From Cycas panzhihuaensis (taxonomy: Eukaryota > Plantae > Cycadophyta): 64,000 nt of DNA. Below the pieces are notes generated by a model. That model saw nothing but the letters and a program-made list of their open reading frames with translations, did not search any database and was not told where the DNA came from. Location of the stretch: the NCBI GenBank assembly GCA_023213395.1, contig CM041465.1, positions 80,855,741 to 80,919,740 on the forward strand, in the 5' to 3' direction. Positions 1,100 through 35,975 of the stretch are shown here, in pieces. The translations under genes were made by a program, and so were the position numbers. How positions within the stretch are numbered: position 1 is the first letter of the stretch; every line of letters starts with the position of its first letter.

Positions 1100-4076
1100 A
1101 ACTTCTATTCTATAACTCTGAATATTGACTAATGAAATTGATAGATTCCTAGGTGGCATCTTTAAAAGGTAGTTGCTTCCACTTAATTAAGGACTCTCGA
1201 ATTATTTTTAATCATAATTATTTCTTATGAATGTTAATCGTGGCTTCAAGAATCAAAATCAAATTTCCTTCTTCATCTAAGAGAGGTAACTCTATCTATA
1301 CAACAATATGGATACCTTTCTTTTTTCTTTAAATAAGATACACAAAACATGTTATATATTTTAGAAGTGAGAAGTCCTAAAGGATAAGCAACTTTCCTAA
1401 CTCTTTGTTTTACCATATATAACCTATAGAACCTTGGGCTTAACTTTTCCTTTCGAGAACCTTTTAAAGAGGCTTGTTTATATGGTTATAACCTTACATA
1501 AATCCAATCTCCTATCACTAGTTCCCTTTTTATATGATGTTTGTCAACTTGTTACTTTATTCGATTCCTAGCTTCTTATATGTGTTCCTTTAAAATTTAA
1601 CTTGTATCCTATGTTTCTTGAAGGTAGTCAATTACTATCTGAACCTTACTATACTTGATTATCCAATCTTTTACTTGGGTTGGCTAGTAGCCATAGAGTG
1701 TTTATAATGGTATTATTTTAATGGATGAATGATAAGGAGAATTATAACAAGCTTCAGCTAGGTGTAGCCATTTAATGCATGAACTCTATTTACCAGCCAC
1801 CTAGTTCTTTAAGTAATTTTCTAAGCATTTGTTAATTGCCTCAGTTTTACCATATATGTGTGAATGGTAAATGACACTCATTTCTAACTTTATATTGACT
1901 TTTTAAAATATCTCCTACCAGAAGTGACTCAAAAATTTAGAATGCTTATCACTAATAATGTTATGAGGGAAACCATATAGTTTATATATCTCCTTAATAA
2001 ATATTTTTAGTAATTGTGGAGCTGTGTATGTGGATTGAATGGGTATAAAATGAGCAAATTTTATTAAGTGATATACTACCATGTATATAGTATATTTCCC
2101 TGTTGACTTAGGTAGTCATGTAACAAAATATATTCTAATGCTTTCCCATTTTTGTTGTGGGATAGGTAAGGTTGTAGTACTCCTAGTGAAGCTATGTATT
2201 TATATTTAGTTGCCTAGAAAATAGAACATTCAACAATAAATTTCTAGATCTATTTTTCATTCCCTTTTAAAAGAATGCTCGTTTCACTTTAAGATATATT
2301 TTAAAGAAGCCCTAATGTCTTACTAAAGATACTACACATGCTTCCTCTAATACTTTGGTTCGTAATGAAGAATTTATCCCTAAGAATATTCATCCTTTGT
2401 TTTATAGGATGTCATTTTTCCGTTCAAATTTATTATCATTCCCCTATTGAATTCTTTGAATTATTTGTTGAAAATTGGGATCCTTACTATACTTTGATTA
2501 TATATCTATCTATCTATATATATAATCCATAATGGTTTTATCATCAAAATTGCACAAAATTAAGGATTTATATATGGTCAGGGTTCTTCATCCTTTTGGG
2601 ATAAGGCATCAACCATCACATTTAGTTTATCCTTGTTATATATTATGTCAAAGTTAAAAGCCTATATTTTTCTCACCCACTTCTATTGCTTTGGAGACAA
2701 CTCTTTCTACTTGAGGAGATATTGTAAACTATTATGGTCTATTTTTACTATAAATCTACTACCTAATAGTTATTAATGCTATTTAACTAGGCCATGCATA
2801 ATAGCCAATATTTCTTTATCATAAGTTAATTTAAGTTGTTCTCTATTATGTATTTTTCTACTTTCAAACGTAATGGGTTTTCCAACTTGCATTAATATTT
2901 TTCTAATCCTTATCCCTAAAGTATTTCATTCTATTATAAAATTTTAGAGAAGTCTAATGAAATTAAAATAGGAAGTTAGTTTATGGTTTGTTTTTATTGT
3001 TTGAAATATGTTACTTTTTCATTCCACTAGAAGGAATCATTTTTTAATAGGTACGTTAAAGTAGAATTTTTTTGCATATAACTCTTAATAAAATGTCAAT
3101 AATATCCTATTAATCCCAAGAAGCCTTTGAGTTTGGTGATAGTTTTTGGTGTTGGCCATTCTTGAATGGCCTTGACCTGACCTGGACTAACTTTTATTCC
3201 TTCTTTTTAGTTTAGATGTCCCAAATATTCTATTTCCTTTTTCCCAAAGAAACACTTCAATTTTTTTTGTAAAAAACTTTTGTTCCTCTAAAATGTTTAA
3301 CACTTCATTTACATGGTTTACATGTTCCTTCCAATTTTTTCTAAATATATCATAAAAAATGACCAAAATAAATTTCTATAGGAAAGGGCTAAGAACTTTA
3401 TTCATAATATTTTGGAATGTGGTTGTTGTGTTAGTAAGATCCAAAGGTATTAATTTGAATTCATAATGGTCATGGTATGTGATAAAAGCAGTCTTATACG
3501 TATCTTCTAGTTTGATTTAGATTTGATGATACCCAAATTTTAGATCTATTTTTGAAAAGTATTGCACTCCTTGTAACTCATCTAATAACTTATCAATCCT
3601 TGGTATAGGAAACATATTTTTTATTATAATTTTATTTAATGCTTAATAATCTATGCACACATGATAGGATCCATTCTTTTCCCTTACTAGGACTATGGGG
3701 GTTACAAATGGGTTCTTATTGGAAACTATTATCCCGAGATCTAGTTAATCTTATATAGTTTTTTCAATTTTATTTAGATAATGATGTGATTGTTTAAATA
3801 AATGAATAACAATTAGGTTATTGTTAACCTCAAGCTCAATTTTATGTTTTAGCCCTCTATTTAAGGGTAACTATACTGGAAGGTCTTGAAAGACTTTTTT
3901 ATGTTTTTGGATGATTCTTTCTAGTTCGTTTTCTTTAATTATTGGTATCATCTCTACTTGAATTTAAAAAAAGTTGAGCCACTATTCCTTGGTGACTCTT
4001 TTTTATTAACTTTTCCATATGTTTATACGATATTAATTGGTTGGTCGCTAGTCTTTCTCCTTAAAGAAAAATAGTT
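1100..4076 (-). pseudogene. Element A pol: RT (~3100-3800), RNase H (~2600-2950), integrase with chromodomain (~1100-2400), many stops
   Basis: Minus-strand motifs [75 protein letters not shown] chromodomain-like segment lies next to the PPT. Confidence 0.85.
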
Positions 4077-4580
4077 TGTTATATACCTACTCCATAACTT
4101 GAAGAAATCACTAAATTAATATAAAGGCACAACAAGCTTTTAAGAGTTTTAACAATTGAAAGACCAATAAATTAATTGATAAATAAGTGATGTTCAATAT
4201 TACATTTAAGGGCATATTTATATATACATAATAGGTTTTTTTTTATAAATAATTGCAACTATTCAAGGGTGCCTATTCACTTAATGATCGATTGATTAGT
4301 TTTAAGGAGGTTTATAACAGTTTATAACAATTCCTCCCCCTTAGGATGTTTTACCCATAAAACATAGCTAAATAATTACAATCCTTAAAATGAATATTTT
4401 CATTCATTGAGGTTACATCCAATAGAATATTACTTAGATGTTGTAAGCTTTTATTAAAAGATGATTATGCTTGAAGACCTTGGCAATATTTTTCATGTTT
4501 TTAGGATATTTTACATATTTTATCTCCTTTAGTTGTCAATTTATTTCTACTTAGTACATTAGAAATTGAGATTTTGTATT

Positions 4581-6300
4581 TTATAAATGTTTTCCACTAT
4601 CTTCATGTGAAATTACTTTGGTTTTTCTTGAGTTTTTTCTTGAAAACATGATGTTTTTTCCTTCTTTCCTTAATCTTATGAATAACTCATCTAGATTCAA
4701 TTTAAAAGTCCCAAGTGTACTAAGCCATTGGCTTCCCAACATAATACCTACACCTCCCACATCAATGACATAAAAGTCTTCTATAATGTTGATATTACTT
4801 ACTGTGAGACAAAGGTATTTCATCATGCCTTAGTTTGATATTTCTTATCTTCCTCTAATACTTACCTAGAAATGAGGAGTCCTTAATGGAAATAATATCA
4901 GTTACTTAGCATAGTTCTTGTCATTAAAATTATAAGTACTATCTAAAACTACTAAGATTATAATAACTTGATTTTTGATAGATCCTTATAGTTTTAGTGT
5001 ATTTAGTTGAGTGAAACTACTCATAGATGAGATTAGCATATTTAGATTGATAACCTCAAGATTACAATAACTTCCTTGATATTCATAGTTATGATAATCT
5101 CCTTGATTATGTTATAATCCTCACTCATATTCCTCTTCATCAATATTATCATTAGCCAATAATCTAATTGTATATAGCTGGTTCATTTGGCATTTGTGCC
5201 TAGGACCCCACTTCTTTTTGCATCTAAAACATAGGTCTTCTTTCCTTAATGTTTCTTATTATGTTCTTATCTTTAGAATGATTAGTTTAACAGATTGATT
5301 TAAATTGATTGATAATGTTTTATGTTGAGTATTTGGAAATAGATTATACTCAATAGATGAAGGAATATAGGGGTTTGTATTAGTTTTGCATAATACATTA
5401 AGCTTATCTTCATGTATTCTGGCTAATTATATTGCTTTGTTAAGATCTTTTAGTTCTTGGACCTTAACATTGGCTTAGATTTTCATTATTAGGCCATCGA
5501 TGTATGGTTAAATAAGACTATGGGTTAAGATGTCTTATAATATATAACTTAACTTAGTGAAAGATGTATATATTCTTCTATAGATCTAGTTTGTTTTAAC
5601 TTCTATAAATCACAATGGTAATTATAGTTGGTTACTATTTCAAATTGTTTAATGAATAAATGGATAACTTATTTATAGGCTGGTAATTAATTCTCAAATA
5701 TAGCATATTCTAGACATTGCCACCATTTGTATATTATTTTATCCATGTGTAAGATAACCAAAGTAACTTGTTCTGCTAGCTCAATTTCCATTAGACGAAA
5801 ATAATTTTCCATATGCTAAATCCACGCTCCTAGCTCATGTGATTTTTGCTCAATATTAAAATGTTATCTCATAAAATTTTCTAACTTTTTCTTTTTCTAT
5901 GACTATATAGTTTGTAAGCAATTAAAATATGCTTGAAAACCCACTATCTTCTATTCTTTAAGAGTTAGATTTTAGTAGTCATTAAGATATTTCTTAATAG
6001 ATTCATTTTCAAGATTAACTTGAGTTGTTTGAGGATCTAAATGATTCTTTCTAGATTGGTCTCTAGCATATGATTGGCAACTAATTCCTTTATCTTTGGA
6101 GTCAGGAATCATCATGTCTTCTTTTTTATTATTTGTCATGATTGTCATTTTTCCTAAAATTTGATGTAGGATATGGTTTAAGAGAGCATTCAATATTTGA
6201 ATAACTTTATGGACTACTTATATAACGGGTTCATCTATATCCTTTTGAATGGAATTATCAACCATTTCTTTCATACTCATTACTTTATAATGGTGCATGT
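4581..6300 (-). pseudogene. Element B gag and aspartic protease remnants; RT, RNase H and most of integrase absent
   Basis: ORF 4581-4826 (VIDVGGVGIMLGSQWLSTLG). CFRCKKKWVLGHKC at ~5190-5235. Sequence parallels A at 20120-21760. The protease region runs almost directly into the PPT. Confidence 0.75.
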
Positions 6301-6905
6301 ATGATTCCATTGATCTCCTTTTGTAACTATACATTAATTCATCAAATTTATATTAATAGAATGAAGAATATTGTCACGATGCTTGTTTAAGGGATGATAG
6401 ATATCTAACGAATATGTGTATGCAAAACACAATTATAGATATGAGAGAATCTAAGATACTCTAATTGTGAGGGCAAGACTTGATTATAATGGTTGATTTA
6501 ATATTATATCTTTGCATGTCAATAATATGAATTTCCTTTTTCCTAATTATACATAAGTTGTGACTCACCTATTCGCAATGAATATTTCTTATAAAGTATT
6601 AAATAATATAGGATTCTAGTTTGTAGGAAGCTAAAGATAGGTTAACGAATGAAGGGATGAAGGTGATAGAATAAAGGACGAATGAGTAAGACTAACGATC
6701 GATAAATTAATCTAGCAAATGTAATGTATGTTAAGAAGTTTATCTTTGTTATAAAGGAGCATATAAGGTGATTCAAAAAAGTGTATATAAAGTAGCACAA
6801 TTATTTAACCCTTTAAAAAAGATAAAAGAATATCATAATCAAATTATATAATATCTTACTTGGATGGCTCCTAATAATATTACATATAATATAAGGTGAT
6901 GTACA

Positions 6906-7060
6906 GGGTATATTAAAGAAACAATTATATGTTTATAATCATTAATGATTTGAGTATAATGCCCTCTTCCATGATTACAAGTATTACTTTGCTCAATAAA
7001 CTCAATGTCAAAGTCTTGACAAAATTAGGATAATGTAGTTTGACTATTAGTTTTGATGAG
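6906..7060 (+). pseudogene. Captured DUF674-family gene fragment in the leader of B, antisense to the element, ending at a GT donor
   Basis: With one frameshift and one stop it reads GYIKETI/MFIIINDLSIMPSSMITSITLLNKLNVKVLTKLG*CSLTISFDE, then GAG|GTTAGT at 7060/7061. This fits the recalled DUF674 motif GFVKG..TFMVTDDL.V.P.S.ISSI.LLNKLNV.D...LEE..V.IG.EE. Confidence 0.75.
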
Positions 7061-8787
7061 GTTAGTAAATTGAATGGTTGATATTGTTGAAATATTTAAT
7101 AGAGATCATTCAATATTAAGAATAATGAAGTAAGTATTATGAAAATAATAAAAATATTATTAACTCGTAATCAATGTATATGCATCATAATGACACTACA
7201 ATAATAACTCAACAACGATCTCTGTCTTGACTCAATGTGTACTACTCTACCTCATTCACTTATTTATACATCATAAGTGAGAGTGTGTAGGATAAAGTGA
7301 GTTATATGTAGGACTATTAACCTCTAATATAATTAATGATATAACACATATTTATTAACTAATGACATATTGACCACCTACTTGCATATATGTGCATTAC
7401 AATGATATTATAATATTAACCCTCTAAAGTCTAATGCCTTCCCTTAATATATATTTGGGAAATCCTTAAATTTTCAATACCTTATTCTTAGAATTGTCTT
7501 AAAGATAATGTTTTCAGTTTCAACTTCATTCTTGTAATGGCGTTCTTGTAGTAGTCCTTGAGAGTATATTGGCTGTAATACCCAATTACATTAACCTTAT
7601 GTAAACTCTCTCTATTTCTTATATTTTATATTAGAGTTGTGGGCCACATTGATATGTGTTCCAAATCTAAGTAGACCAATGGGGTTCTCTCACTAGTGGT
7701 GAGCTAGTATTATAAGTATGTACTCTTCATTGTTCATAATTGAGTTTTGGTCAATTCTCCATACATTGTACTTATTGTTGTATATACTTTATTTTTTATC
7801 TCTTACTAACCATTAAGGTTTTATGTGATTATTGCATTCCTAATTCTAACATGGTATCAGAGCCCAAACCAATCCTTGTGGACTCTATTGCAAACCCTAG
7901 TACATGTTATCCTTGATTTTGAGCTTTCAAGCCTTATAAATTTTTTGATATGCCTGCTTGGTGATTTTGTCAAGTTAAAGATCATTTCAAGTTACATCTT
8001 ATACATATTTTGTTATGGGATTGTTATCAAATTTTGAAGGGTCTTTTTAATGTTGATGAGAGGCTATTTCCAAGCCCATTTTTGAAGTTTTTTAAAGTTG
8101 TTTAAAGCCTATTAAAGATGCTCAAGTGGACATCTTCCACGCATGTGGCGCCACAATAATATTACATGCAAGTGAAAATCCATGAAAGCTCATTCTAATT
8201 ACTGGAAGACCACCTCTGTTGCACGTTAGTAGAAAAAAATCTAACCAGGATCATTGACAACAGTTGAGAGAGTCCTTCTTGGCTAGGAGCAACTCTATTT
8301 CAAAATTTTTTTGTAGATCTACACGTGGATAAAGGTCTTATATTATTTCTATTGATATGTACTTTCTTTATGTTAAAAATATTCAAAAAAATTCTATATT
8401 CTGACCTATGTTCCTATGTATTTTTTTCAAAAAAAAAAAAAGGATCTCCCAAATCTATTTGTTGGTGAGCTTCCATTACCAGATCCATGGAGAGAAAGAT
8501 TACAGACGAAAAGATTCTCTTTAAGATTCAAGATCACTATTCTACTGTGCTTGCTGATTGGGATGTATAAAAGCTATCTATTTGGGTTTCCTGCAATCAT
8601 AACATGTTCTCTAGAGGCTAACGGTTATTCCACAGTTGTATCATTTTCATAATGAGACCTGTAACTATGCCAAAAGAATCTTAACAATATTATCTGCAAT
8701 ATGAGCATCATGTGAACTATTGCATGGAAATTTTAATTGATTACAATAAGAAGACAATATACATATGAAAGCTTATATTCCATCAAG

Positions 8788-9179
8788 GGATGAGAGCACG
8801 TGAGGTGCTACTAAAGAGCAAGAACCTTGGTCTTTCAAAGGATGAAATGCAGAAACTGTTTCCTATTGTGGTTGCAAGCTCTTTGGATTCAGGAGCCTTT
8901 GATGGTGTCTTGGAGCTTCTTGTTTGATTTGGAAGGAGCCTTCTTGAAGCAATAATGATGATGATTCTAGAGGTATGGCAGAATGACAAAACAATGAATC
9001 TTGATTGATGAGCTTTGTATGAATATTTCTCGGCATTGATGGAGCCATGGGATGGACCCGCTCTTGTATCATTCACTGATGGTTGTTATCTTGGAGCAAC
9101 GTTAGACCGTAATGGACTTTGTCCTTGCCATTTTTATGTTACACATAGTGGGCGAGTTATCATGGCAAGTGAAGTAGGA
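8788..9179 (+). pseudogene. GLT1: Captured fragment of NADH-dependent glutamate synthase (GOGAT), amidotransferase domain
   Basis: One frame with three stops: [127 protein letters not shown]. This closely matches plant NADH-GOGAT. Confidence 0.93.
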
Positions 9180-9329
9180 ACTCCTAGTTACATTGGTCCC
9201 CATTTGATTTTGTTCGGTGGTGCCACTGCCCTTGAAGGGAATTCTATAGCTTTTGGTCTATTGTCATTCGTGAGAATGCATGCATCAGGTTGGCGAGCTT
9301 TTCCCATTGGAGATCCACCATCTCCTCGA
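9177..9329 (+). pseudogene. BSL1: Captured N-terminal kelch-region fragment of a BSU1-like (BSL/PPKL) Ser/Thr phosphatase
   Basis: Reads [23 protein letters not shown]...(frameshift)NACIRLA, then an internal deletion, then PIGDPPSPR. The recalled BSL1 sequence is [25 protein letters not shown]...SAGIRLAG...LTP.GEPPSPRAAH. Confidence 0.85.
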
Positions 9330-10575
9330 TCCATGGCATCCAATCTCACTCACAACATCCTTATCTTCAGCCTGCACATAATGGTTCCCTGCGCAATAAT
9401 GGCACCTCTCCTCTGTTCAAAGACCTACATCCAATGGCAACTCAAATCAATGGCAGCTTTGCACCACTGGTGATTTGTGATATCCACAGCCATGCTCCCA
9501 TAACATCAATGGCCTCCTACATAAATCGATGGTGGTACCTCTAGAATGGAGAATCGATGGTGACAATCCCTGTAACTTGCTTCTCAAGCTCTACAACTTA
9601 ATTCTCATGGCGACATCCCTCCCTCACTCAGAAAATTTATTGGAGCATATTTCCCAGCTATCAGGAATGGACATGGGCGACTCGACTTAGGTAAATATAG
9701 GTATGCTTCTATCCTCATTCCTGTTGGCTTCAAATTGCTATGAGGTTGTTGATAGAGGCATAATGCACATTGATTAGTTGATTGCGTGATTATTATGCAT
9801 TATTTGCCTATGCATGTTGCACCTTAATACCTTAGCCTATGATGACTTGGGATACACATCTCATAGCATTCTATAACCCTCCACCATGTCTCTACCATGT
9901 CTCCAAGCACTCTTGGCTCCTGTAGTCTATCTTTTATCGTTCTTGGTATGACATAATCCTTAGCACCTCACCTAGGCCCTGTTATCACCTTCATTTTGCT
10001 ACTTGTCTCTTTTTGTAGTCTTTTCATCACACATAGTGGTCCTCCTAGGTCCCAAGACTCTCTCAGCATATTGCCCTCTTATGGTCTAAGACCCCCTTTC
10101 TGGAAGCCTCTTAGGGTCTCCCCTCTCTATTTTTCATTAGTTTTGGTTGCACTATTGTAAACTCTGTGGTACCATTGTAAACTCTGTGGTATCATGAAAT
10201 TTGTCATGATGTGACTGTTCAAAAGCCTTCTTTTATTTGGCCACGGCTAATTTTGCATTAAATACAAAATTTCCACATGGTGTTGGGTTGTTTCCTACCT
10301 AGGGCAAATCTTAATCGCTCGTTGAGTTAGGTTTGGGTTTAAAAACCCAAAATTTCCCTCATTTTGTCTCTTCTTCCTCCTATTCTTAAGAGAAAGTTTT
10401 AAAACAAGCTTCTAACTTGTTGTACTTACCTTCTACTCTTGTTATCATCTCCTCTAGGGAAGAAATGTGAGTTGTAGGTCTTCAACAACACCTCTTGAGA
10501 TAGATCTCCATCACCAGTGTCTCACTAAGGCTAAAGCACTAATTTGTTGAAAGATATACTCTTCCTTTGTACCAT

Positions 10576-12699
10576 TGTAGGGATCTTTCAATAGTTTTCC
10601 AAAGGGAGCCTCCTCTCCCTCCAGTTTTCATGGTAGATCTGCCTTAGGTCTACCCCTTACCAGGTACTTACAAGCTTGCATATGCTCTTTTCTTTCACAA
10701 CATAAGCATTTTGTTTGCTTGCCTTTCCTGTTTATGTGTGAAATCCTCCTTCATTCTTCTATTTTGGGAGGCAGACCCTCCCTTCTGTTGGTTTGTCCCT
10801 CTTCTCTTTGAAGTTTTCCTTGGGTCCATCCAAGGAGGTAGAAGGAAAAATGACTAGTGGGGAGAGAAAGGAGATCAAGGCAGGGTTTTGCACCCTTATG
10901 CCTTCTCCTTAAGGGTAGACCCCTACTCTCCATCTCTTTTTCCTTCCCCATACCTCTCTTGTTCACCCAGAAAATTTTAGGGCTAGGAAACTTTGCAAGT
11001 TGCAGTGTTAGTGGCCCCTTGCTATGCCTGCAACCAGCCACCAGAAAACCCCATAAAACCTAGTCATCAACACCCCTTTTGTGTTCCTTAGCTTTGGTTT
11101 TACTTTTACAAAATCCTGCAAAATTTACACTTTACAACTTTTATAGCTTTTGCAACTTTATTGCAACACCTATGTCAACATGCAAAACTTATTGTTCTTT
11201 TTCTACCATTAGATGATTTAGGCCTTTATTGGTCAGCCGCTTGAGTACTTGGAGAAACAGAGACGTTTCACTGTGGAGGGTCATCCATTCCAAGGCTACC
11301 ATCTTTCTTCCTTTCACCCCCCTTATCTGCATTATTGGTTTGTTGTGCATTCATGGTAAAACAAACTAGCATTGCATATTTGATCATTTAAAGATATTCA
11401 TTGAGGTTATTACTTTGCTCCTTTCTTTCGAAGAAAAGCATATACACATATTTTGTCCATACTTGCTCCCACGTGCATCTAGTGTCCCTTGGGATAGGGC
11501 AAACAGTTTGTTGTGTAGGTTTCATATGATTCGAAGTAAGCAAAGACCTTCATTATAGGTATGCCTACCTTTCCCTTATTATTATTGTTATTCTTTGAAA
11601 TTCCAAATATAAGTATTCCTTTCTTGCCTTTTGCTTCTTCTACATTTGGGTATTGGGGAAGGTAAGAAAGCCCGTACTGATGTTCTTTTCGCCATACCAT
11701 CCATGACAAGGCATACCAAGGAAGTAGGCATGGATCATGAAGGAAGCAAGGAGGCCTCCACATTGACCGTCTGGTTTCTAGGCATGCTACTTCTATCTCA
11801 TCCTTTCACTTTTCACCTTCATCCCTCATTTTTTTTTACTCCAAAAAAAAAAAAGGAGGATTAAAGGAAAAGGTAGTTCGCACTACATTGCTTGTCATTT
11901 ATCTTGTTTTTCCACATAAGGAAAAGTCAATTACTTTGCATAAGTAGGTGTTGCTCCCTATTAGCCACGTCTCTACTTTCTCTCCCTTCCACTCAAACCC
12001 TTGCTTCCACTAGGATTTAGGTAGGATAGGTTGTTCATCCTTTTACCTGTACCTTTCTTTCTCTTGCATGCTATTAGGTCAACTCACATTAGTGATTACA
12101 TTCTTTTCCTTAGTTGCTTGATTATCTTTTCTTTTCTATGCTTATGAAAGATAAAGAGAGGGAGGTTAATACTTAAGAAAAGAAAGAGTAAGTGTGTTGT
12201 TCATTCATTTTCCTTTCTACTTAGAAACAAAATACAAATAACAATAACTTGTACCCCCATATTGTCTCACCACATAACAAAAAACAAAGAAACAACATAT
12301 TTTGCTTTGTCTCCTACACCTAACTCCTGTTTCAGGTGTAGGTGCCTTGAGGGTACCACCCCTTAAGGTCCTCTTTCCCTCCTTTAGTAAAGCCTCTCTT
12401 TGCTTTACTTTTCGCCCAAAGTTGGCCTTTTTTGCCCAACTTCCTCTTTGTCCCTCACATTGCTAGCTGCCTACGACTTGGGTATGAGTCTTTCCTTCTT
12501 GGTTAGGACTTATTCCACCTATTCCCTCTTCACGGGAAGGGGCACGTCTTACCTTATGCTCCTTCCTTAGCCACCCAGGATAGGAGGGTCTTTTTTGAGG
12601 TTACTCGGCAAACTGAGGAAGTCCCTCTCTTGCCCAAGCACGAATCGAGGAGGTGCTTACCCTAGAAGGGAGTTTGTGCACCATTTACGGGTCCTCAAA
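10576..12699. mobile_element. Putative ~2.1 kb solo LTR (gypsy, long-LTR type) inserted in F
   Basis: GC-richer non-coding block. Ends TGTAGGGATC...GGTCCTCAAA could be decayed TGTGGGGACC...GGTCCCCACA. The flanks ACCAT/CTTAT match only partly. Confidence 0.35.
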
Positions 12700-14647
12700 C
12701 TTATGTTTCGATGCATGAATGCCCTTTTTGGGTGATCATTTCCCTTACCCTCGTAGATCCTTTAGCCATGAAGTTGTTAGTTGCATTGGATTGATCTCTT
12801 CAAATTTGGTGACCCCCAAACGTATGATTCTAGAACCCTAACAAATTTAGCGTTATATGATATTTTTTAGACATATATATATTTTTAATCATGGCATGGA
12901 CATGATATTATGTAAAAAGGATTACATTATTTGGTGTATATTATTATGGCAGACTTCAAATTTCATTGGAAAGGGTGTATTGTTTTCAATTTGAAAAATT
13001 GAATTAAGTTATATTGTATATTATTTCAAGTCTATCCAAATTTCTTAAATCGGCCAAAGATCAGGTCCTATGGAGGCTTAATATGACCAGCAACTAGCTC
13101 GTAGAAGGGTCTAGTCCCCATTTTTATTATTTTCTAAAGTATTGGTCACTTTTTTGGACATATCTTGAGATTAGGAGGTCCTTTTTCAGTCTTGTCTATT
13201 GCATTGGGTCTGTAACAGAGAGACCTTTAATTTTGAAGGTCCTTTGACATATTTTGGAGTTATTTTCATGGAGATATTTTAGTTTAAAGTCATAAGATCT
13301 TATCTTTCTTCATTTTTTCTTAGCTTCTACAGGCACATATTGTATTTTCGAGGCTTCTTGATGTAATGTACTCCAAATGAGAGGGATGACATGTACTATG
13401 GTCTTATTTTTTGGCTCTTGAAGAACCCATTGTGATTATCTTATACTTCATTTATGAGAGAGAGTCATATATGCTACACTCAAGTCATATATTATTTTTT
13501 TAGTCATGTAAAAACTTTTAATGTTAGTTAGTTTGCCTATGGTGGTAAGTTGTTAGCCTAATGATATATCTTTTAGCCCATGTGGCATATTTAAGGCCAT
13601 AGTGCTATTATATTTCTGGTCATTAGATGCCGAAGAAGTGTTAGTCCTATTGAGTGAGAGATAGGACACACTTTTAAAAGCTACTCTTACTTGCTATGTG
13701 CCATGTGCCATGTGCCTTCTATATTTTTCTGCTTGCACTCCTATATGAGCAAGGGGTGCGAAATTATTCAACTACTCTTGCCAGCTCCTGATTGATCCAT
13801 GTATACAAAGGGAGTTTCTACCCAACTGGTGGTTGCAACAACTGATGACCCATGCATTCCAGTAGATGGACTCCACTTCATATGGACTTCGGTAGCTTTT
13901 TTATTTTGTGTAACAGTATTTGTGATCCAGTAGACTCTTGAAGACTCAATCTTATTATTAATGTGACAACATTTATGTGATTGACTATTATAGGGGGAAA
14001 TGTTAGGTGTAATACCCAATTATATTAACCTTATGTAAACTCTCTCTATTTCTTGTATTTTATATTAGAGTTGTAGGCCACCTTGATATGTGTGCCACCT
14101 TTAAGTAGACTAATGGGCTTCTCTCACTAGTGGTGAGCTTGTATTATAAGTATGTACTCTTCATTATTCATAATTGAGTTTTGGCTAATCCTCCACACAT
14201 TGTGCTTATTGTTGTATGCATTTCATCATTTTGTATTTTATTGTTTAGCTCTTGTTCCCTAATAAAGTTTTATGTGATTATTACATTCCTAATTCTAATA
14301 GAGTAATGGCCCTTAAACTTTGCTTTTTTCATCTTGGAATATAACATTGAGTCATTCATCATACAAAAGTTATAATAGATCATAGTTTGTCCAATTTAAA
14401 CTTAATGTAGATTTGGCAAGTAATCTTATAGATAATCATCAAAAGCATCTTAAAATTTGAAGTGTATATCAAGTATGACTTCAACCATTATTCTAATCAT
14501 CACCTGTTTGCCTTTATTTTCTTCAACATATGAATAATTAGCATCTATTAAACCAATATCAAAATTTAAAGATAAGACATCAAAAGAAGAATTAACATCA
14601 CTTGAAATATTTGAGAAGTGATCATTATCCTATATAAATTCTTCCTT

Positions 14648-15340
14648 TTAACTAGCATATCTAACAATAACTCCTTTATCCTTTACAGTAGAATCTTCAT
14701 TAACTTGTGAACAATTCAAATTTGAATCAATAGTCAAATCAAGAATTAAGTTTATATCAACGAATTTATCTTCAACAAGGCAATTTGATTTTGATTCTTC
14801 CTCCCCTAAAACAATAGGGTCATCTAAAGAAACTTCTATTGTTTGATCACAATCATCAATAGTCAGTTTATGAATTTCAACATGCTCAGTAATGTCATCA
14901 TATTCAACAACATATTCAAGAGTAGTCTCTTTATATTCATTAATATTCCTTATTCCTTCATTAATACCTTGACATATTTTTCTACCTGCATCAATAGTAT
15001 TGTCTTCATCCTCTTTATCTATATTATAACTATTAATGATTTTGTTTACTTTTTCAAGAATCTCTTGGATCTCTTGAGGACTCTTTTCATACACATCATT
15101 GAAAAGATTTCGGGCTTCTTTAGTAGTATCAACATTATAAATTACATAAACGAGAAAATGGTAAGAAGAAGGAAGTTCATCTTTATTTAATGCAACAAGA
15201 ATGACATCAATTATTGTTTTATTCTTCTTCCTAAAATTTTCTTCCCGTTCTACATCAGTCAAGGTATCATATCCATTAGTGATCATTTCTATAACCTTTT
15301 GTATACAAATATGCTTTGCATTTTGATTGCCCAACATCAA
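14648..15340 (-). CDS. Element C gag-like ORF (copia gag N-terminal-like region plus acidic extension), 230 aa open
   Basis: ORF track. VIEMITNGYD...RKKNKTIIDVILVAL...VDTTKEARNLFNDVYE resembles copia gag (W..V..GY...KD.KA...I..AL...TAKEAW..L...Y). It is sense to element C. Confidence 0.55.
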   Translation of the reverse strand: MMLGNQNAKHICIQKVIEMITNGYDTLTDVEREENFRKKNKTIIDVILVALNKDELPSSYHFLVYVIYNVDTTKEARNLFNDVYEKSPQEIQEILEKVNKIINSYNIDKEDEDNTIDAGRKICQGINEGIRNINEYKETTLEYVVEYDDITEHVEIHKLTIDDCDQTIEVSLDDPIVLGEEESKSNCLVEDKFVDINLILDLTIDSNLNCSQVNEDSTVKDKGVIVRYAS

Positions 15341-16314
15341 TAATTTATTTTAGTGTACTTAGGTAAAGTAAAAGGAAAGTTTGTTAACCAATATTGATTC
15401 CTTTCAGGTACAAAAATGATGATGTCGTCTAACTCCATGATGTAAGGATAAGATGATCAAAAATATATTACACAAAATTTATGCATCCACTTCAAATTGA
15501 AATAGCTTTATCAAATCAATAGCAAAATAACTTAAAACATGCTCCAAGTTGTAGTACTCTGAATGAGGATTTCGACAAATCAAATAGTTTAAAAAATAGA
15601 TGCTTAGTTAAAGAGATATCATGAAAATTGTGAAGTGACCTCCTTATAAACAAAAATTAAACTAGAATAAACTTTAGCTCCTTTTCTCATATTAGCACCA
15701 GGTCATATTGAAACTACATAGAACTAAGGGCTTAATTGTTAGGGGGCTAATGAACTTCAAAACATATTATAATATGATTTATTATAAATTTGACTTTATA
15801 AAAATAATTAAATATGCCTTATTCTCATTTGGCATTCATAAATTTGAATGAAGTATCCAAAATAGCTTAATATGTAAAAACCTTTGTAAGAGAAGATCAA
15901 GTTATGTCAAAAAATTAAGAGTTGCATAATAACAACCCTATAATGACTGATTTTCATGAAAAATCTAACTAGAATGATAAAATATTCAAACTGTTGGATC
16001 TTTAGAAGATAGACGCCACTCTAAACTTGATGCAATAATATTTATGAATCCAAGATAGAGGTGAGTAAATCAAATGGCGCATTCAAAACCACACAATGCA
16101 AAGCCATACAATAATTCAATATCTAGAGTATAGAATGATGTAATCACTTACTACCAATTGTCATGAAGATGCAATCAATGATAAGGTACTAGGGTGAATC
16201 ATTAGGTAAGGTCATGGCTTAAATATTCTCCTCAGGGTGAACAACAAGTAGGTGATATAACCAAGTGTCTTCCCTTTTATTCCCTCACATAAAATGAGAC
16301 AAAGTATCTTTCTA

Positions 16315-17065
16315 GTAGGTACCATATACAATGTTGTATATATTATTAGTGTCAACAAACTATAGAAAGTAATCTTCTATGATTTCAAGAAGTCCATCTT
16401 GATCTTAATAGGGACATCTACTCTAATATTTAAGGGAATGATGTCTTCATATTGCTTAGTTTACAGAGATGAAAGAAGCTTGTCATTCTAATGCATGTTG
16501 GTCCTGTTGAGGGCTACCACTATAACTATAGTGTTCTTGCAATTTTGGTAGAAAGCTGCCAACTTCCCATAATAGAGGTCTATTTTTATATATGACATGG
16601 CTATGTAACTTTTTAATTTAATTTTATTTTATCTATTATTATTTTCTTTTGGATTCATGGCCATGATTTAGATGATAAATTGTAAGCTTATGGAAGAATC
16701 ATCAATATTGGCATCAAATTTTATAATCTAGATTCTCTACACTAAATACTTTTGAATCTTAGGTTAGAATATTAGGTGAACGACAATACACACAATTGCC
16801 ACAATAATAATAATTGGGAAGAGAAAGTAGAATAACTAGGAGAGGCAGTGACAACTCTTTATCACCTTCAATTATGAGTAATTTTATGCACAGTTGCATT
16901 CTCCTTTCCTAATCACAACTGTAATCATTGTATAATTCACTCAACCACTCCTCTTTAGAGTTTTAACTGGCTATTTATCATTTATTTCCATGGCTAAATA
17001 TGTAACTATATATCCATGGCTGGGCACTTCATATAACTACTTTTTGGGCACCTATGATTAACTAT
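16315..17065 (-). pseudogene. Captured NDR1/HIN1-like (LEA_2 domain, NHL6/NHL13-type) gene in the leader of C
   Basis: Minus-strand translation with stops and shifts: (Q)VPKK(Q)LYEVP ... ENA ... KSCHCLS(W)LFYFLFPIIIIVAIVCIVVHLIF(Q)PKIQKY.VENL.IIKFDANIDDSSISLQFII.IMAMNPK...SYIAMSYIKIDLYYGKLAAFYQNCKNTIVIVVAL...LLSSL...IIPLNIRVDVPIKIKMDFLKS.KITF. The NHL motifs appear in the expected order. Confidence 0.85.
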
Positions 17066-19779
17066 CTTCTTCTATTCCATACACTAGAACAATCATTCTT
17101 TAGGGTTTTATCTCATGAGCTTATGCTTTTATGTAGACATGCAACCATCACTCCTTTATATAGTCATTGATTGCATACATTATATATAGGGTTTTATTTA
17201 TCACATAGTTTAAAATAGAAGAAATAAAAACCAAAGTGAGTTCCCTGGTGATGGCTTTACAATGGCAAATTAACACATTTATAAGCTGAAAAATAGAGCA
17301 TAATCTCATTTGCATCTATGCATGAATATATGTAAGATTTGTTCATGCTAGATTTTCTTCAATGAAAATACTTTTACATAAACTTAATAACTGACTTCGA
17401 ATTTCACTAATCAAATCCTTAATATTCTCCAACACAAACCCTGGAAAGTATTTACAGTTATAAACCTTCACTTTTACCATACAAATAGAATTTAATGACT
17501 GGAAAAATTATATACATTCATCTATCATTATTTTTTAGTTTCACAAATTCTTGCCAACCAAGTTCTTTATAGGGTAAACCCTAGTATATAGCTTTTATTC
17601 ACATAATAAAGTGAAAGAATCATATTACCTAGTAAAAATTCTATCTTGCATCAATGAAGGTCATGGCTTGGCATAACTTGCAATAATCATAGCCTTAAAG
17701 TTTCACCGTCTACAAGTAGAACCATAAACTAGTAATCGACTTTACGGAGCTATCTCCACACTCATCAATAGAATGGTGAACCTGTAAAATGATAATCTTA
17801 ACAAGCAACTTGCTCTGATACTATGTTGAAATATTCAATAGAGATCATTTAATATCAAGAACAATGAAATAAATATCATGAACATAATAGAAATATCATT
17901 AACTCATAATCAATATGTCTACATCATAATGACACCACAATAACAACTTAACAATGATCTCTATCTTGACTCAATGTGTACTACTCTATCTCATTCACTT
18001 ATTTATACATCATAAATAAGAGTATCTAGGATGGGGTGAGTTATATGTAGGACTATTAACCTCTAACACAACTAATGATGTAATACCTATTTATTGACTA
18101 ATAACATATTTACCACCTACTTACACAAATGTGTATTATAATAATGTTATAATATTAACCCTCAGAAGTCTAACATTTATAATTGAATCTAGTTTTTTTC
18201 TTTATGATGATGTGCTTACAATAATACATAGTAAATAAAGAAATGGATGATGGTGAATATCATAATATACCACACCACTGGAAAATATATTAATATGATA
18301 TCAATATATTAATCAAATGATGGTGAATATATTAATACACCACGCGACTATTATTTTAGAAAATGTTTCCAAATAACATGCTAATTTTATTGCAGAAATA
18401 TCTATATAAAATATATATTTGATCACGTAAACATGCTATGTCTAAGACAAGGAGAATGGGCGATGTAACTATGGTGAATATGTAAAGAAGATTTCTATGC
18501 AAAGGTGATTAATGTAGTCAGCCACAAAGAGAAAATCAACTCGATGGAGGTTTTTTGATGGTCTCACTAGGTCCTGAGTCTAATATTTCTACTATGAAAT
18601 TTTAAATCAAGGAATTTAAGATTGATTAGTTGGGCACCACTGGTAAATGTTGAATATATATTTGTGTAGAGCTTGATGATGTTAGAATAGAGCTAGGCTA
18701 TGTGAAAGGACTTTGGTTATGATATATCACCACTTCCTCTATACTCTCTAAGAGATTGCTCTATATATATTTTTTCTTTTTTCTTTTTGTAATTAATTTA
18801 TATGCTTACATATGAATGGTGATAAGAAGAAAAGGAACATATGCTTAAACTTACAAAAATTATTAGAGACTAGGGAGAAAATGTTATAAACATATTATGA
18901 TGTAGATAACAATGATAAAGTGATGATTCAGATGAGGAGATGAGGTGCCACAATTAATTAGAATGTAATGTATGATAAATAGTTGAGATAGATTGCCTCA
19001 CTATTTCTATGTTTGTTTAAAGAGATAATAATATTTATAAATTAAAACTCCAAATGTTTAATCTTATAAGAATATAGGTTTGAGTGAGAGGATAATCAAA
19101 TATGAAGTTTACACGAGTAATGCAAGTTATAGTGGTAGTTATTTGACTAGATCAAGAGTACAACTCATATATGCTTATCTGCAAAAGTGCCCATAACTAG
19201 TGTATGTCTAATTGTAAAAAGTGCTTAGTTAATAGTCTAAGTTTTTGCTAATTTATTAAATGTATAAGAGATATCTTAATGAATATATAGGATATTAAGT
19301 GAAGGGAATCAAAAATCAAGTAATGGTACTGGCTAGTAATGAAGATATTGGCTAAAAGTTAAAATGAAAAGGATGATGTGTTTTCTCTTTCCTAGACTTA
19401 GTATTATACTTGCAAACAAGGGCTAATAATTAAGATTCTTATAAACACCAAAACATAGAAGTAAATGGATTAAATAAAGATTATCGATGCTAACTAAGCT
19501 AAATTAAACTCACTTTGATACCACTTGTTAAGGACCTACTCCATAATTTGAAGAATTCTCTAGATTAATATGAGGGCACAGGAAGATTTTAAGAGCAATC
19601 AAAAGACTAATAAATTGATTGATAAATAAGTGACATTCAATATTACATTTGAGGGTATATTTATATATACATAATAGGCCTTTTTCATAAGTAGTTTCAA
19701 TTATTTAAGGATGTTTGTTCACTTAATGATTGATTGGTTAGTTTTAAGTAAGTTCATAACATAGCCCTACCTTATTTTT

Positions 19780-20115
19780 TATTAGAGTGGCATTATATCC
19801 ACTTAATCAACTAATGTAAATGAGGTGATATATTATACAAATATTATGATATATTATTGTGATGTAATATTGGGTCGACGAATGTAATCTCTAATCTATT
19901 TATTTGAGGCACTTATGGGTCTATAAATAGGGATCCAATGTCTACTGTAATATTATGGGAGATGTGTGAAAATATAACATTATATTTCTGTGGTGGGGTT
20001 TTCTCAAAAGGGTTTCTTACATTAAATCTATTATCCCTGTGTGCTTGTTCATTTGATGTCTATTATGTACATAAATGATTATGTGTCTTATCTATATATT
20101 TGGTGTTTTCTAATA
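19780..20115 (+). repeat. D1: isolated LTR of the D family, followed by a possible PBS remnant, inserted in A
   Basis: Colinear with 32268-32596 and 43127-43456. Followed by tggtgtc (cf. TGGTATC). No TSD, so it may be a truncated 5' end rather than a true solo LTR. Confidence 0.8.
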
Positions 20116-20119
20116 TGGT

Positions 20120-21760
20120 GTCTCATAAATAATTTATCTAAGTTTATTTTGAAGGAATCGAGTGTTATGAGCTACTAACTACCAAGAATGATATCTACTC
20201 TTCCCACATCAAGCATGTAAAAAATTTCTTTGATAGTAATATCACCGGCTGTGAGTTTAAGGTTTCCCATCATACCTTATCATAAGATAACTTATTAGCC
20301 TCTAACACTTACTTGAAAAGTGGATGTTCTTTATGGAAATAACCTTAAGTATAGATGAGAGATCCTATCCATAAAATTATGAGTGCTTCTTGTATCTATC
20401 AAGATTATAATGACTTAATTTTGTATGAATTCTTATAGTTTCAATGTATCTGATCTTGTGATACCACTCATATCTAAAAATGATAATTTTATAATGTCAT
20501 GTTGGTGATTGTAGTAGTCCTCTTATAATTTATAATAATCTTCTTATGCTGTTTTTAGGCTTCCTTCCTCCTCATATCCTTCATCCTCTACTATGGGTGA
20601 TAATTTAATTATATATAATTAGTTTTTCTAACATTTGTGATCCAGTACCCACTTCTTGGTATATCTAAGATATAATTTTTTTTTTTTATTAAATCTTATT
20701 AGTTTTTCATTGTTCTTTGAAAAACAAGCCTAATTGGTTGGTTGGACCTAGCTAGTAAGGAACTAGGTCAAATAATTGGTAATGGATTAGGCTAGGTAAA
20801 TGGGGGAATATAGGGTCTTATTTTAGATTTTTGAAGCTCGTTGATCTTATCTTCTTATGTCCTAACAAGTCATATTGATTTATTAATATCATTCAATTCT
20901 TGGGTCTTCACATTAAATTGAATTTCTTTTATCAGACCACCAATGTATAATTGGATGAGTCTATCAGTTGTAATATCTTCTAGTATATAGCTCAATTTGG
21001 TGAATGTTGTGTTGTATTATTCTACAGTTCTTGTTTACCTTAATTTTTGTAATTCATAATAATAATCACGATTGGCTACAACTTCAAATCTTTTAATGAA
21101 TAAATGGAGAAACTCTTTCCATGTTGGTAATTAGTTTTAGAATGTGGTATGCTCCAAACTATGCTACCATTCATATGCAATTCCATCCATGTGTAACATT
21201 GCATAACGACTTGCCTAGTTGTCTCAATTTTTGCCAAGGAAAATAATTTTTCATTTGTTGTATCCATGCTCTTAGTTTATGTGTCTTCTACTCAATGTTA
21301 ATGTATTTCATCACATTTTTTTCTAGCTTTTTCTTTCTTTTTTATAATTATATAGATTGTAAATAGTTAAAATATGCTTGGAATTCAATCACTTTTTATT
21401 CTTTAGGTGTTAGGTTTTGGTAGTTATTTAGATATTTTTCTAATAGGCTCATTGGTGAGATTTAATTATGTTGTTTTAGGTCTAGAATTATCTCCTATAA
21501 GTTGTGTTCTAACATACGATTTATGACTAATCCCTTCATCTTTCAAATCTAATATAATTACTTCATCTTTTCCTTATGTTGCCATAATAGTTAAATTTTT
21601 AAGATTTGATGTAAAGTGTGGTTTAAAAGTATATTCAATTTTTGTACTACCCCATGAAGTACTGGTGTAATAGGTTTAATTATGTCTTTTTGACTAAATT
21701 TCTAGCCACTTTATTAATGTTCATTATATTTGTAATGGTATATATATAATTCCATAGCTT
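20120..21760 (-). pseudogene. Element A protease and gag remnants
   Basis: Homologous to B 4670-6300 (FYMLDVGRVDIILGS, YTKKWVLDHKC, WIQQMKNYFSL). Continues the frame broken by the B insertion. Confidence 0.75.
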
Positions 21761-35200: not shown

Positions 35201-35949
35201 AGCAACCCAAGTTTTTCCATCTCAAAGTTACTTTTAATTTCTAATTAGAGCTAAGCTATCATATCATCATCATTTCTAGTTATAGATAAGTAATCCACAT
35301 AAAGCACTATTTTAATGATCAAGTTTCCTATAATTTAAATATACATATTTGAATTAGAGGGTGAATGAGTGAACCTATGCTAAGTGAAGAAGGCATCAAT
35401 CTTAGCATACCAAGCACAAGGCACCTACTTCAATCTATATAAGGCTTTCTTGAGCTTTAAAACTAAGTGTTCTCTATTAAGAACAATATAGTTAAAAGGT
35501 TGTTTCAAGAAAACCTCTTCAATGAGCTCTCCATTCAAGAAATCACTCTTCATATCTATTTAGTATATGGGCCAGTTGAATTGAGCTACAAGTGACATAA
35601 ACAAATGGAATGTGGTCATGTTAGCAACATGTGTAAAGGTCTCATCATAGTTAATCCCCTTTTATTATTTAGAATATTTTGTAACTAAGTGAGCTTTGTG
35701 ATACTCAATGCTACCATTAGCATAAAATTTTATCCTATAAACCATCGATAGTCAATTGACTTTTTTCTAGGTGCTAGTGCTATCAGCTCCCATGTGTCAT
35801 TCTTAAGGATTAAGGTCATTTCTTTATCTATTATAGATTTTTACATTTAGTTTTTGACTACCTCCTCAAATGTTTAATGCTTAGAAGTCTTAAGGACACA
35901 TGTCATTAAGGTATAGTTGGTTGAGTGCTTCATGTTAGATTCTCTCTTG

Positions 35950-35975
35950 GGAGGAGGAGGAGGAGGAGGAGGAGG
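35950..35975. repeat. (GGA)8 microsatellite, poly-Pro in the INT-RT linker of G
   Basis: Read directly from the sequence. Confidence 0.9.

What the first reader, a model, noticed from the sequence alone, without database searches (positions are those of the whole stretch)
8788..9473. In-frame GOGAT-BSL chimera inside a non-autonomous LTR element, joined at a microhomology
Seen: element F has perfect PBS, PPT and TSD. Inside it, ~130 codons of NADH-GOGAT run without a break or intron into the BSL phosphatase N-terminus, leaving a 152-aa open frame (9015-9473). The junction GAAGTAGGA (E-V-G) overlaps the BSL E-E-G-T-P codons. Established: GOGAT and BSL are unrelated multi-exon genes, and retroelement RT can switch templates between co-packaged RNAs at short homologies. 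Inference: F captured two different spliced host mRNAs by template switching and made a new fusion ORF under LTR control. A second microhomology-type deletion lies within the BSL part (~9294).
Basis: partly seen in the sequence, partly recalled or inferred. Interest (0 to 1): 0.9.

Follow-up and report, generated by a model that had tools for sequence, protein, structure and literature searches.

The report
Host-gene chimera in LTR retrotransposon
A non-coding plant LTR retrotransposon carries spliced pieces of two unrelated host genes (NADH-glutamate synthase and a BSL Kelch phosphatase) joined in frame; it is a real but decayed example of the already known way such elements pick up and shuffle host mRNAs.

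Summary
Element F (7567-14300) has 285/300-nt LTRs (K2P 0.127), an exact tRNA-Met primer site, a polypurine tract and a GAGTA target duplication, and no detectable gag/pol. On its sense strand, 8789/8790-9179 is 130 ungapped codons of NADH-GOGAT (74-75% identity). These equal exon 8, exon 9 and the first third of exon 10, with introns 8 and 9 precisely absent. It runs in frame, over a 9-nt overlap (9171-9179), into about 54 codons of the BSL phosphatase N-terminus. That piece crosses the conserved BSL intron site after 'GIR'.

Contigs from two other sequencing runs bridge the junction at about 87% identity. The junction is therefore neither an assembly error nor unique, and the chimera was copied after it formed.

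The cargo is decaying. It has three in-frame TGA stops and 13 of 89 invariant residues changed, the BSL piece lacks about 17 codons, and no RNA run holds it. A 'new fusion ORF under LTR control' is not supported.

The structure matches LTR-mediated retroposition (maize Bs1; Tan et al. 2016), so it is a new member of a known kind. Template switching at a microhomology is plausible but unproven, because no parental DNA was reachable. First readers noted similar multi-gene chimeras elsewhere in this genome (untested), but not this one.

The parts
7562..7566 (.). Left target-site duplication GAGTA
   Evidence: Read directly; identical to 14301-14305
7567..7851 (+). 5' LTR of element F (TA...CA)
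   Evidence: Alignment with 14001-14300; very high copy in other runs
7852..7863 (+). Primer binding site TGGTATCAGAGC (initiator tRNA-Met type)
   Evidence: Exact 12/12 match directly after the LTR
7864..8441 (+). Repeated leader/backbone of the element family; ends in a T8-C-A13 run (8421-8441)
   Evidence: Depth falls from tens of thousands to hundreds across it, then to about 100 after 8438 (table 2)
8442..8788 (+). Low-copy cargo of unknown origin, AT-rich. Candidate retained GOGAT intron 7 or an unrelated RNA.
   Evidence: Low depth; no Pfam hit; no protein relative; abuts the exon-8 start of GOGAT to within 2 nt
8789..9179 (+). NADH-GOGAT fragment: exon 8 (104 nt), exon 9 (180 nt) and the first ~107 nt of exon 10, spliced. 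Pseudogenised, with TGA stops at 8925, 9006 and 9009.
   Evidence: tblastn 130 codons ungapped; Pfam GATase_2; PDB; exon map; decay counts
9171..9179 (+). Junction overlap GAAGTAGGA (E-V-G). E and G fit both GOGAT (S-E-V-G) and BSL (G-E-E-G-T-P).
   Evidence: GOGAT alignment ends at 9179 and BSL alignment starts at 9171 in the same frame
9171..9332 (+). BSL/BSU1-like Kelch phosphatase N-terminal fragment (EEGTP...GNS, then W-R..P.GDPPSPR). It crosses the intron site after GIR. About 17 codons are missing.
   Evidence: phmmer whole-library hits; names from sources; tblastn
9015..9473 (+). Residual open frame (152 codons from TTG; first ATG at 9039). The tail 9333-9473 has no homology.
9333..9647 (+). 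Low-copy cargo of unknown origin with a recurring ATGGC motif
   Evidence: Low depth; no Pfam hit; no BSL or GOGAT match
9648..13989 (+). Rest of the interior: CT-rich, GC 0.37-0.49, no coding domains. It starts exactly where a very abundant repeat begins. In other genomic copies a PPT-like ...AAGGGGGTAG precedes that start.
   Evidence: Loose ends at 9648/9650 and depth jump; composition; Pfam negative
13990..14000 (+). Polypurine tract ATAGGGGGAAA
   Evidence: Read directly
14001..14300 (+). 3' LTR of element F (TG...TA)
14301..14305 (.). Right target-site duplication GAGTA

Best explanation
Element F is an old (LTR K2P about 0.13), non-autonomous plant LTR retrotransposon. Part of its interior (8442-9647) was replaced or extended by reverse-transcribed host RNA.

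The cargo holds a spliced piece of NADH-GOGAT mRNA (exons 8, 9 and part of 10). This is fused inside exon 10 to a spliced piece of a BSL phosphatase mRNA that starts inside BSL exon 1.

The most likely origin is LTR-mediated retroposition. Host mRNAs were packaged with the element's RNA, and reverse transcriptase switched templates at short similarities (here at most GAAG.AGGA) and then back to the element. The resulting cDNA kept both LTRs and could integrate. The chimeric element was then copied again by helper elements, giving several diverged copies with the same junction.

Since then it has decayed as methylated repeat DNA and encodes no working protein.

Shown: the element's anatomy, the identity, frame and orientation of both fragments, intron absence, decay, and other copies with the same junction.

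Inferred: packaging and template switching, microhomology at DNA level, and mobilisation by transposition rather than segmental duplication.
For: - A complete LTR element with TSD, PBS and PPT encloses the cargo.
- No gag/pol Pfam domain occurs in the 20 longest stop-free pieces of the interior.
- GOGAT is 130 codons ungapped on the element's sense strand.
- The pine NADH-GOGAT exon lengths E8=104, E9=180, E10=344 map exactly. GAFDG...PALIS is 60 codons, which equals E9.
- The Dionaea model P0076 starts at the E9 start, has a 25-aa insertion at E9|E10, and stops 6 residues after the E10 end. Nelumbo P0137 and Thalictrum P0020 also start at (G)AFDG.
- Pine introns I8 (83 bp) and I9 (469 bp) have no counterpart in the window.
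- BSL models P0009, P0010, P0011, P0015, P0016 and P0152 all lose homology right after GIR. The window continues to W-R..P.GDPPSPR.
- The junction is mid-exon in both genes and has a 3-codon overlap.
- Contigs X2#12 (9023-9243) and X6#27 (9011-9246) bridge the junction without gaps at about 87% identity. Other contigs bridge 8441, 8789 and 9332/9648 at 82-94%.
- The features match the published criteria of LTR-mediated retroposition and Bs1.
Against: - Parental GLT1 and BSL DNA of this species was not available, so microhomology and intron loss rest on other species.
- No cargo-less member of the family was found, so the backbone/cargo switch points are undefined.
- The 5' end of the GOGAT piece coincides with the exon 7|8 boundary. 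Random template switching does not predict this; it hints at a partly spliced RNA or another route.
- The cargo's right border abuts the exact start of another abundant LTR-like repeat (9648). The interior may therefore be a composite or hold a nested insertion, and the element that made the capture need not be F's own family.
- No RNA evidence was found.
Confidence: 0.7

Rival explanations
1. DNA-level joining. cDNA fragments of GOGAT and BSL (and unknown pieces) were ligated as filler DNA by end joining or microhomology-mediated repair at a break in an integrated element. Alternatively, a pre-existing chimeric retro-pseudogene was later enclosed. No reverse-transcriptase template switching inside a particle would be involved.
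For: The short overlap at the join is equally typical of microhomology-mediated end joining. The cargo has unexplained flanks (8442-8788, 9333-9647). The right border is a precise LTR terminus of another family, as expected for insertion or joining of DNA ends.
Against: Cargo and backbone borders recur together in diverged copies. The cargo is sense-oriented between PBS and PPT of an element with an intact TSD. Multi-gene sense chimeras in LTR elements are the documented product of template switching.
Confidence: 0.17
2. A functional new chimeric gene: the 144-152-codon frame is transcribed from the LTR and translated into a GOGAT-BSL fusion protein under selection, as reported for maize Bs1.
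For: The fusion is in frame and the open frame is among the longest in the element. Bs1 is a precedent.
Against: - Three stops lie in the upstream GOGAT part.
- 13 of 89 invariant GOGAT residues are changed. 14 of 25 private changes, and all three stops, fit single C>T or G>A decay.
- The frame holds only about 55 codons of a 420-position amidotransferase domain, lacking its N-terminal catalytic end, plus half a Kelch blade with about 17 codons missing.
- One third of the ORF has no homology.
- No RNA run holds it and no protein relative carries both parts.
Confidence: 0.04
3. Capture from genomic DNA by a DNA transposon (Pack-MULE, Helitron or CACTA type), or by ectopic recombination, later overrun by LTR elements.
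For: Such carriers of multi-gene fragments are common in plants.
Against: Three intron sites are crossed without intron sequence. No terminal inverted repeats were found around the cargo (0 inverted pairs of 100 nt or more in the window). The cargo sits between PBS and PPT of one LTR element.
Confidence: 0.04
4. Assembly artefact or chance similarity.
For: The region is highly repetitive. No run holds more than 30% of the sampled words of 8700-9700.
Against: Independent contigs from two other runs or organisms bridge the junction. E-values for both homologies are far beyond chance.
Confidence: 0.02

Closest known systems
Maize Bs1 LTR retroelement (Jin & Bennetzen 1994; Elrouby & Bureau 2001, 2010; as summarised in PMC13317346 and PMC5131818)
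   Same: A low-copy, pol-deficient LTR element whose interior holds partial, intronless pieces of several unlinked host genes joined into a hybrid reading frame. [quoted passage not shown]
   Different: Bs1's hybrid ORF is transcribed and translated. Here the frame is interrupted upstream, heavily decayed and without RNA evidence. The host genes differ (GOGAT and BSL versus H+-ATPase, xylanase and glucanase).
LTR-mediated retroposition by microsimilarity-dependent template switching (Tan et al. 2016, PMC5131818; yeast Ty assays cited there)
   Same: An internal partial retrocopy flanked by one LTR element, a multi-parent chimera, a short shared sequence at a fusion point, and secondary copies.
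   Different: Microsimilarity could be judged only at protein/codon level for the gene-gene join and not at all for the element-gene joins. This copy is old (about 13% LTR divergence), not polymorphic.
Genome-wide LTR-captured gene fragments in rice and sorghum (Wang et al. 2006; Jiang & Ramachandran 2013, PMC3726574)
   Same: Host gene fragments inside full-length LTR retrotransposons, many of them pseudogenes evolving neutrally.
   Different: Those surveys mostly list single-gene captures. Here two genes are fused in frame within exons.
Complex or recombinant LTR elements made by template switching between different retroelement RNAs (Sabot & Schulman 2007, PMC1950507; Veju, BARE-2)
   Same: F's interior appears to include the 5' end of another family's LTR (from 9648) next to the cargo, as expected if several co-packaged RNAs were copied into one cDNA.
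   Different: A nested insertion could not be excluded. Those cases involve TE-TE chimeras, not host genes.

Membership tests
LTR-mediated retroposition / gene-capturing LTR retrotransposon (Bs1 type) | Host-derived sequence lies between the PBS and PPT of one element with two LTRs and a target-site duplication | tested here: met
   LTRs 7567-7851 and 14001-14300, PBS 7852-7863, PPT 13990-14000, TSD GAGTA on both sides
LTR-mediated retroposition / gene-capturing LTR retrotransposon (Bs1 type) | Cargo is a (partial) retrocopy: parental introns are absent | tested here: met
   GOGAT is ungapped across E8|E9 and E9|E10. BSL continues past the GIR| intron site. Caveat: intron sites come from other plants, not from this genome's own loci.
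LTR-mediated retroposition / gene-capturing LTR retrotransposon (Bs1 type) | Microsimilarity at the switch points | tested here: inconclusive
Element-gene joins: no cargo-less family member was found to compare.
LTR-mediated retroposition / gene-capturing LTR retrotransposon (Bs1 type) | [quoted passage not shown] | tested here: met
   Contigs X2#12 and X6#27 bridge 9171-9179 at about 87% identity with no gaps. Others bridge 8441, 8789 and 9332-9648. Whether they arose by transposition or segmental duplication was not shown.
LTR-mediated retroposition / gene-capturing LTR retrotransposon (Bs1 type) | Transcription of the chimera from the LTR | tested here: inconclusive
   No listed run that holds the stretch is RNA. 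The tool states that this does not show silence.
Non-autonomous LTR retrotransposon (TRIM / LARD classes) | No gag, protease, RT, RNase H or integrase coding capacity | tested here: met
   The 20 longest stop-free pieces of 7853-14002 gave no retroelement Pfam domain. The longest ORFs are about 100 codons.
Non-autonomous LTR retrotransposon (TRIM / LARD classes) | TRIM size class (LTRs of a few hundred bp and an interior well under 1 kb) | tested here: not met
   The LTRs of 285-300 bp fit, but the interior is 6.1 kb. It would be about 0.8 kb plus 1.2 kb of cargo only if 9648-13746 is a later nested insert, which is untested.
NADH-dependent glutamate synthase (GLT1) gene | Complete amidotransferase, FMN and NADH-subunit domains in an open frame | tested here: not met
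   Only Pfam GATase_2 positions 245-372 of 420 are present, with three in-frame stops. It is NADH-type by 75% identity to Dillenia NADH-GOGAT.
BSL/BSU1 Kelch-repeat protein phosphatase gene | Kelch beta-propeller plus C-terminal PP1-like phosphatase domain | tested here: not met
   Only about 54 codons of the N-terminal Kelch region are present, with about 17 codons missing. There is no phosphatase homology anywhere in the window. The Kelch_3 hit is only E=0.14.
LINE-mediated (chimeric) processed pseudogene | 3' poly(A) tail and target-site duplication directly flanking the retrocopy | tested here: not met
   There is no A-run at the 3' end of the cargo (9600-9647). The only A13 run lies at its 5' side (8429-8441).

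The most novel reading that the evidence does not exclude
This genome may host a class of small pol-less LTR elements that capture and fuse pieces of several host mRNAs, often in frame and within exons, far more often than in rice, maize or sorghum. That would be an RNA-level counterpart of Pack-MULEs. In this 64-kb window three nested pol-less elements are each said to carry host cargo, and first-reader notes list many more elsewhere (untested). The exon-boundary start of the GOGAT piece could then point to capture of partly spliced nuclear RNAs.
Probability: 0.2. Interest if true: 0.6.

Novelty: new member of a known kind. Interest (0 to 1): 0.3.

Why it matters
It is a clean, well-delimited plant example of exon shuffling by an LTR retrotransposon. 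Two unrelated, spliced host mRNAs are joined within exons, in frame, at a short overlap, and the product was copied further. Such cases document how retroelements generate chimeric coding sequence and possibly siRNA sources against GLT1 or BSL genes.

This copy is a decayed pseudogene, so its value is as a mechanistic fossil and as one data point for a possibly high rate of mRNA capture in this genome. It is not a new gene or a new mechanism.

Tried and rejected
I therefore could not fetch parental BSL or GOGAT genomic DNA or the Acacia BSL-fragment loci. The microhomology and second-deletion claims stay untested.
- A protein search with the whole 153-aa frame found 1306 GOGAT fragments but none covering both halves, so no annotated chimeric relative exists.
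- A protein search with the 5' unknown cargo (8440-8649) found nothing.
- Pfam on 20 interior pieces found nothing. Pfam on the BSL piece alone gave nothing, and only Kelch_3 at E=0.14 within the whole frame.
- blastn of F against the rest of the window found no second family member and no cargo-less copy.
- The search of earlier findings by sequence and by the words GOGAT/BSL was blank.
- No run held more than 30% of the sampled words, and none was RNA.
- A nested solo-LTR reading of 9648-13746 (GAGCA repeat) was considered. One chance GAGCA is expected there and the ends are not canonical, so it is left open.
- A LINE-type processed pseudogene was rejected because there is no 3' poly(A).
- Fd-GOGAT origin was rejected. 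The window is 75% identical to NADH-GOGAT, and the Synechocystis Fd-GOGAT in PDB scores lower (52 versus 65 bits).
- I did not follow up the other cargo claims in the window (NDR1/HIN1, DUF674). Only an ORF listing was run, and it showed no long open frame.
- Read laying was given 4001 letters.

Full report
**Anatomy of the element**

Direct-repeat search and alignment and direct reading show one LTR element on the + strand.
- The 5' LTR is 7567-7851 and the 3' LTR is 14001-14300.
- The 12-nt primer site TGGTATCAGAGC follows the 5' LTR exactly (7852-7863, 0 mismatches).
- The polypurine tract ATAGGGGGAAA (13990-14000) abuts the 3' LTR.
- GAGTA is repeated on both sides (7562-7566, 14301-14305).
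- The LTRs differ at 33 of 285 aligned sites plus one 15-nt indel. K2P is 0.127, or roughly 5-9 Myr at commonly used plant rates.

F sits inside a minus-strand element with LTRs 7085-7384 and 17824-18123. That element sits inside another with LTRs 4076-5992 and 19525-21437.

The 6.1-kb interior has no open frame above about 108 codons. Its 20 longest stop-free pieces hit no retroelement Pfam domain. 'Non-autonomous' is therefore justified.

**The two host fragments**

*GOGAT.* In frame +3, 8790-9179 aligns without a single gap to 130 residues of plant NADH-GOGAT. Identity is 74% to P0019, whose 90% cluster holds Dillenia turbinata NADH-GOGAT P0139, and 98/130 to P0139 itself. Pfam GATase_2 covers profile positions 245-372 (E=3.6e-24 for the last piece). 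PDB GOGAT large chains match at up to E=7e-17.

*BSL.* From 9171 the same frame aligns to the N-terminus of BSL/BSU1-type Kelch phosphatases (E[24 protein letters not shown], later W-R..P.G-D-P-P-S-P-R). An exhaustive phmmer over 1.84 billion representatives returned 17 hits at E of 1e-3 or better, best 7.9e-8. Nearly all are BSL N-termini: Marchantia, Vitis, Erythranthe, Ensete, Asparagus, and Tanacetum 'BSL3'. tblastn gives E=9e-12 to 2e-10 over 9156/9171-9332.

**Are the fragments spliced?**

I used two independent proxies.

*GOGAT.* García-Gutiérrez et al. 2018 (PMC5775586) give the CDS exon lengths of pine NADH-GOGAT. E7 is 110, E8 is 104, E9 is 180 and E10 is 344 nt, and the total of 6657 nt equals 2218 codons plus the stop. 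They state that poplar and rice share the 22-exon structure.
- The stretch GAFDG...PALIS is exactly 60 codons, which equals E9.
- Three angiosperm gene models (Dionaea P0076, Nelumbo P0137, Thalictrum P0020) begin their homology at (G)AFDG after unrelated residues.
- P0076 has a 25-residue foreign insertion exactly between PALI(S) and (F)TDG.
- P0076 terminates six residues after the predicted E10 end.

The map fits at three boundaries. On this map the window's GOGAT piece is E8, E9 and the first ~107 nt of E10. Introns 8 and 9 (83 and 469 bp in pine) are precisely absent.

*BSL.* Six truncated models from different plants (P0009, P0010, P0011/P0152, P0015, P0016, and P0002) lose homology immediately after G-I-R. 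This marks a conserved intron. The window runs on from F-V-R into sequence that aligns with the following exon (W-R..P.GDPPSPR), and no intron-sized insert is present.

**The junction**

The GOGAT alignment ends at 9179 (…M-A-S-E-V-G) and the BSL alignment starts at 9171 (E-x-G-T-P). Three codons, GAA GTA GGA, belong to both. E and G fit both proteins. V is GOGAT-specific, and the following T-P is BSL-specific.

On the exon map the join is about codon 35 of the 114-codon exon 10 of GOGAT. In BSL it lies inside exon 1: Logan ORFs P0015 and P0016 run uninterrupted from the start Met through EEGTP to GIR. Splicing therefore did not make the join.

A short shared string (contiguous AGGA, or GAAG.AGGA with one mismatch) is plausible. 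It remains an inference from codons, not from parental DNA.

**Independent support and copy number**

No public run holds the exact locus; the best share of sampled words was 0.30, and none of the holders is RNA. Laying contigs of four runs from four organism labels on 7500-11500 (4001 letters) gave three results.
- *Copy number.* The LTR, leader and the stretch from 9648 are extremely repeated, with summed depths of thousands to tens of thousands. In contrast 8438-9643 is low copy, with depths of tens. Between 3 and 9 distinct contigs per run lie over the GOGAT part.
- *Bridging contigs.* Contigs X2#12 (9023-9243) and X6#27 (9011-9246) bridge the GOGAT-BSL join with no gaps at about 87% identity. 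Other contigs bridge the leader/cargo border (8223/8238-8520, 82%), the unknown/GOGAT border (8451-8829, 88%), the E8|E9 site (8801-9057, 83%; 8740-9072, 97%), and the BSL end up to the repeat start (9229-9676, 86%; about 94% in three runs).
- *Mutation spectrum.* Differences are dominated by C>T and G>A.

The junction is thus not an assembly artefact and not unique. The whole cargo, with the same borders, exists in diverged copies in several related genomes. This meets the 'same switch points in secondary copies' criterion used for Bs1 and Drosophila retrocopies. Whether those copies each have their own LTRs and TSD was not visible.

**State of the coding sequence**
- The GOGAT part has three in-frame TGA codons (8925, 9006, 9009), at positions where relatives have R, Q or K.
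- 13 of 89 columns that are invariant among four reference GOGATs are changed.
- 14 of 25 private codon changes, including all three stops, can be explained by one C>T or G>A step. This is the usual decay of methylated repeats.
- The BSL part lacks about 17-18 codons, including the invariant LAGATADVHCYD block.
- Codons 9333-9473 match nothing.
- The '152-aa ORF' begins at a TTG, which is a bacterial start rule of the ORF tool. The first ATG is 9039.
- No protein in 5.8 billion clusters carries both halves.

A functional fusion protein is very unlikely.

**Mechanism and comparison with known systems**

The structure has these features:
- a partial, intronless, sense-oriented multi-parent cargo;
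- a position between the PBS and PPT of a pol-less LTR element;
- a short overlap at the join;
- further copies with the same join.

This is the published signature of LTR-mediated retroposition by template switching among co-packaged RNAs. It has been shown in yeast Ty assays and in Drosophila and vertebrates, and inferred for maize Bs1 and rice (PMC5131818; review PMC13317346; rice/sorghum survey PMC3726574).

I rate that reading at about 0.7. The main rival, at about 0.17, is DNA-level end joining of cDNA pieces within an integrated element. It predicts the same microhomology and cannot be excluded without cargo-less relatives.

**Two unpredicted details**

Neither model predicts two details, and I flag them.
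- The GOGAT piece starts within 2 nt of the exon 7|8 boundary. The AT-rich 347 nt before it end in ...TCAAG, so they might be retained intron 7.
- The cargo's right border coincides with the exact 5' end of another, very abundant LTR-like repeat. Loose ends in all four runs read ...AAGGGGGTAG|TG before 9648.

F's interior is therefore either a multi-RNA composite or carries a nested insert.

**Verdict**

The 'new ORF under LTR control' is not supported. This is a new member of a known kind and of modest interest. First-reader notes list many similar multi-gene LTR cargos in this genome. They are untested leads and give no support, but they motivate a genome-wide count.

Noticed in passing
window 9643-13751: A very abundant repeat begins exactly at 9648/9650. 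In other genomic copies it is preceded by ...AAGGGGGTAG (PPT-like) plus TG, so 9648 looks like the 5' terminus of another family's LTR inside F. GAGCA occurs at 9643-9647 and 13747-13751, a possible TSD of a nested 4.1-kb insert. The region is CT-rich with GC 0.37-0.49, against 0.27-0.33 around it.
   Followed up: partly
window 8442-8789: GOGAT homology starts within 2 nt of the exon 7|8 boundary of the pine/angiosperm exon map. The AT-rich 347 nt upstream end in TCAAG, so they may be retained intron 7 of the captured transcript. They have no protein or Pfam match.
   Followed up: partly
window 8421-8441 and about 11830-11855: The same odd T-run followed by an A13 run occurs twice in the interior. 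The first marks the border between the repeated leader and the low-copy cargo.
   Followed up: no
window 4076-21437: Triple nesting. F (+) lies inside a minus-strand element with LTRs 7085-7384 and 17824-18123 (PBS 17812-17823). That element lies inside another with LTRs 4076-5992 and 19525-21437 (PBS 19512-19523). Further LTR pairs lie at 21880-29291, 34057-41157, 47155-52377 and 56739-62401, most with the same tRNA-Met PBS on the minus strand.
   Followed up: partly
proteins P0002, P0004, P0006 (Acacia pycnantha, A. crassicarpa): Annotated 'hypothetical proteins' that are short BSL N-terminal fragments (…[25 protein letters not shown]…) fused to unrelated sequence, namely a GH3 glucosidase-like and an RNase H-like piece. 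Two lie on one contig. BSL exon-1 fragments seem to have been spread in other plant genomes too.
   Followed up: no
window 9333-9647: The low-copy cargo tail has a recurring (A)ATGGC motif every 20-60 nt and no homology in any frame tested.
   Followed up: partly
ORF listing shows no open frame above 55 codons, so any such cargo is degenerate.
   Followed up: no
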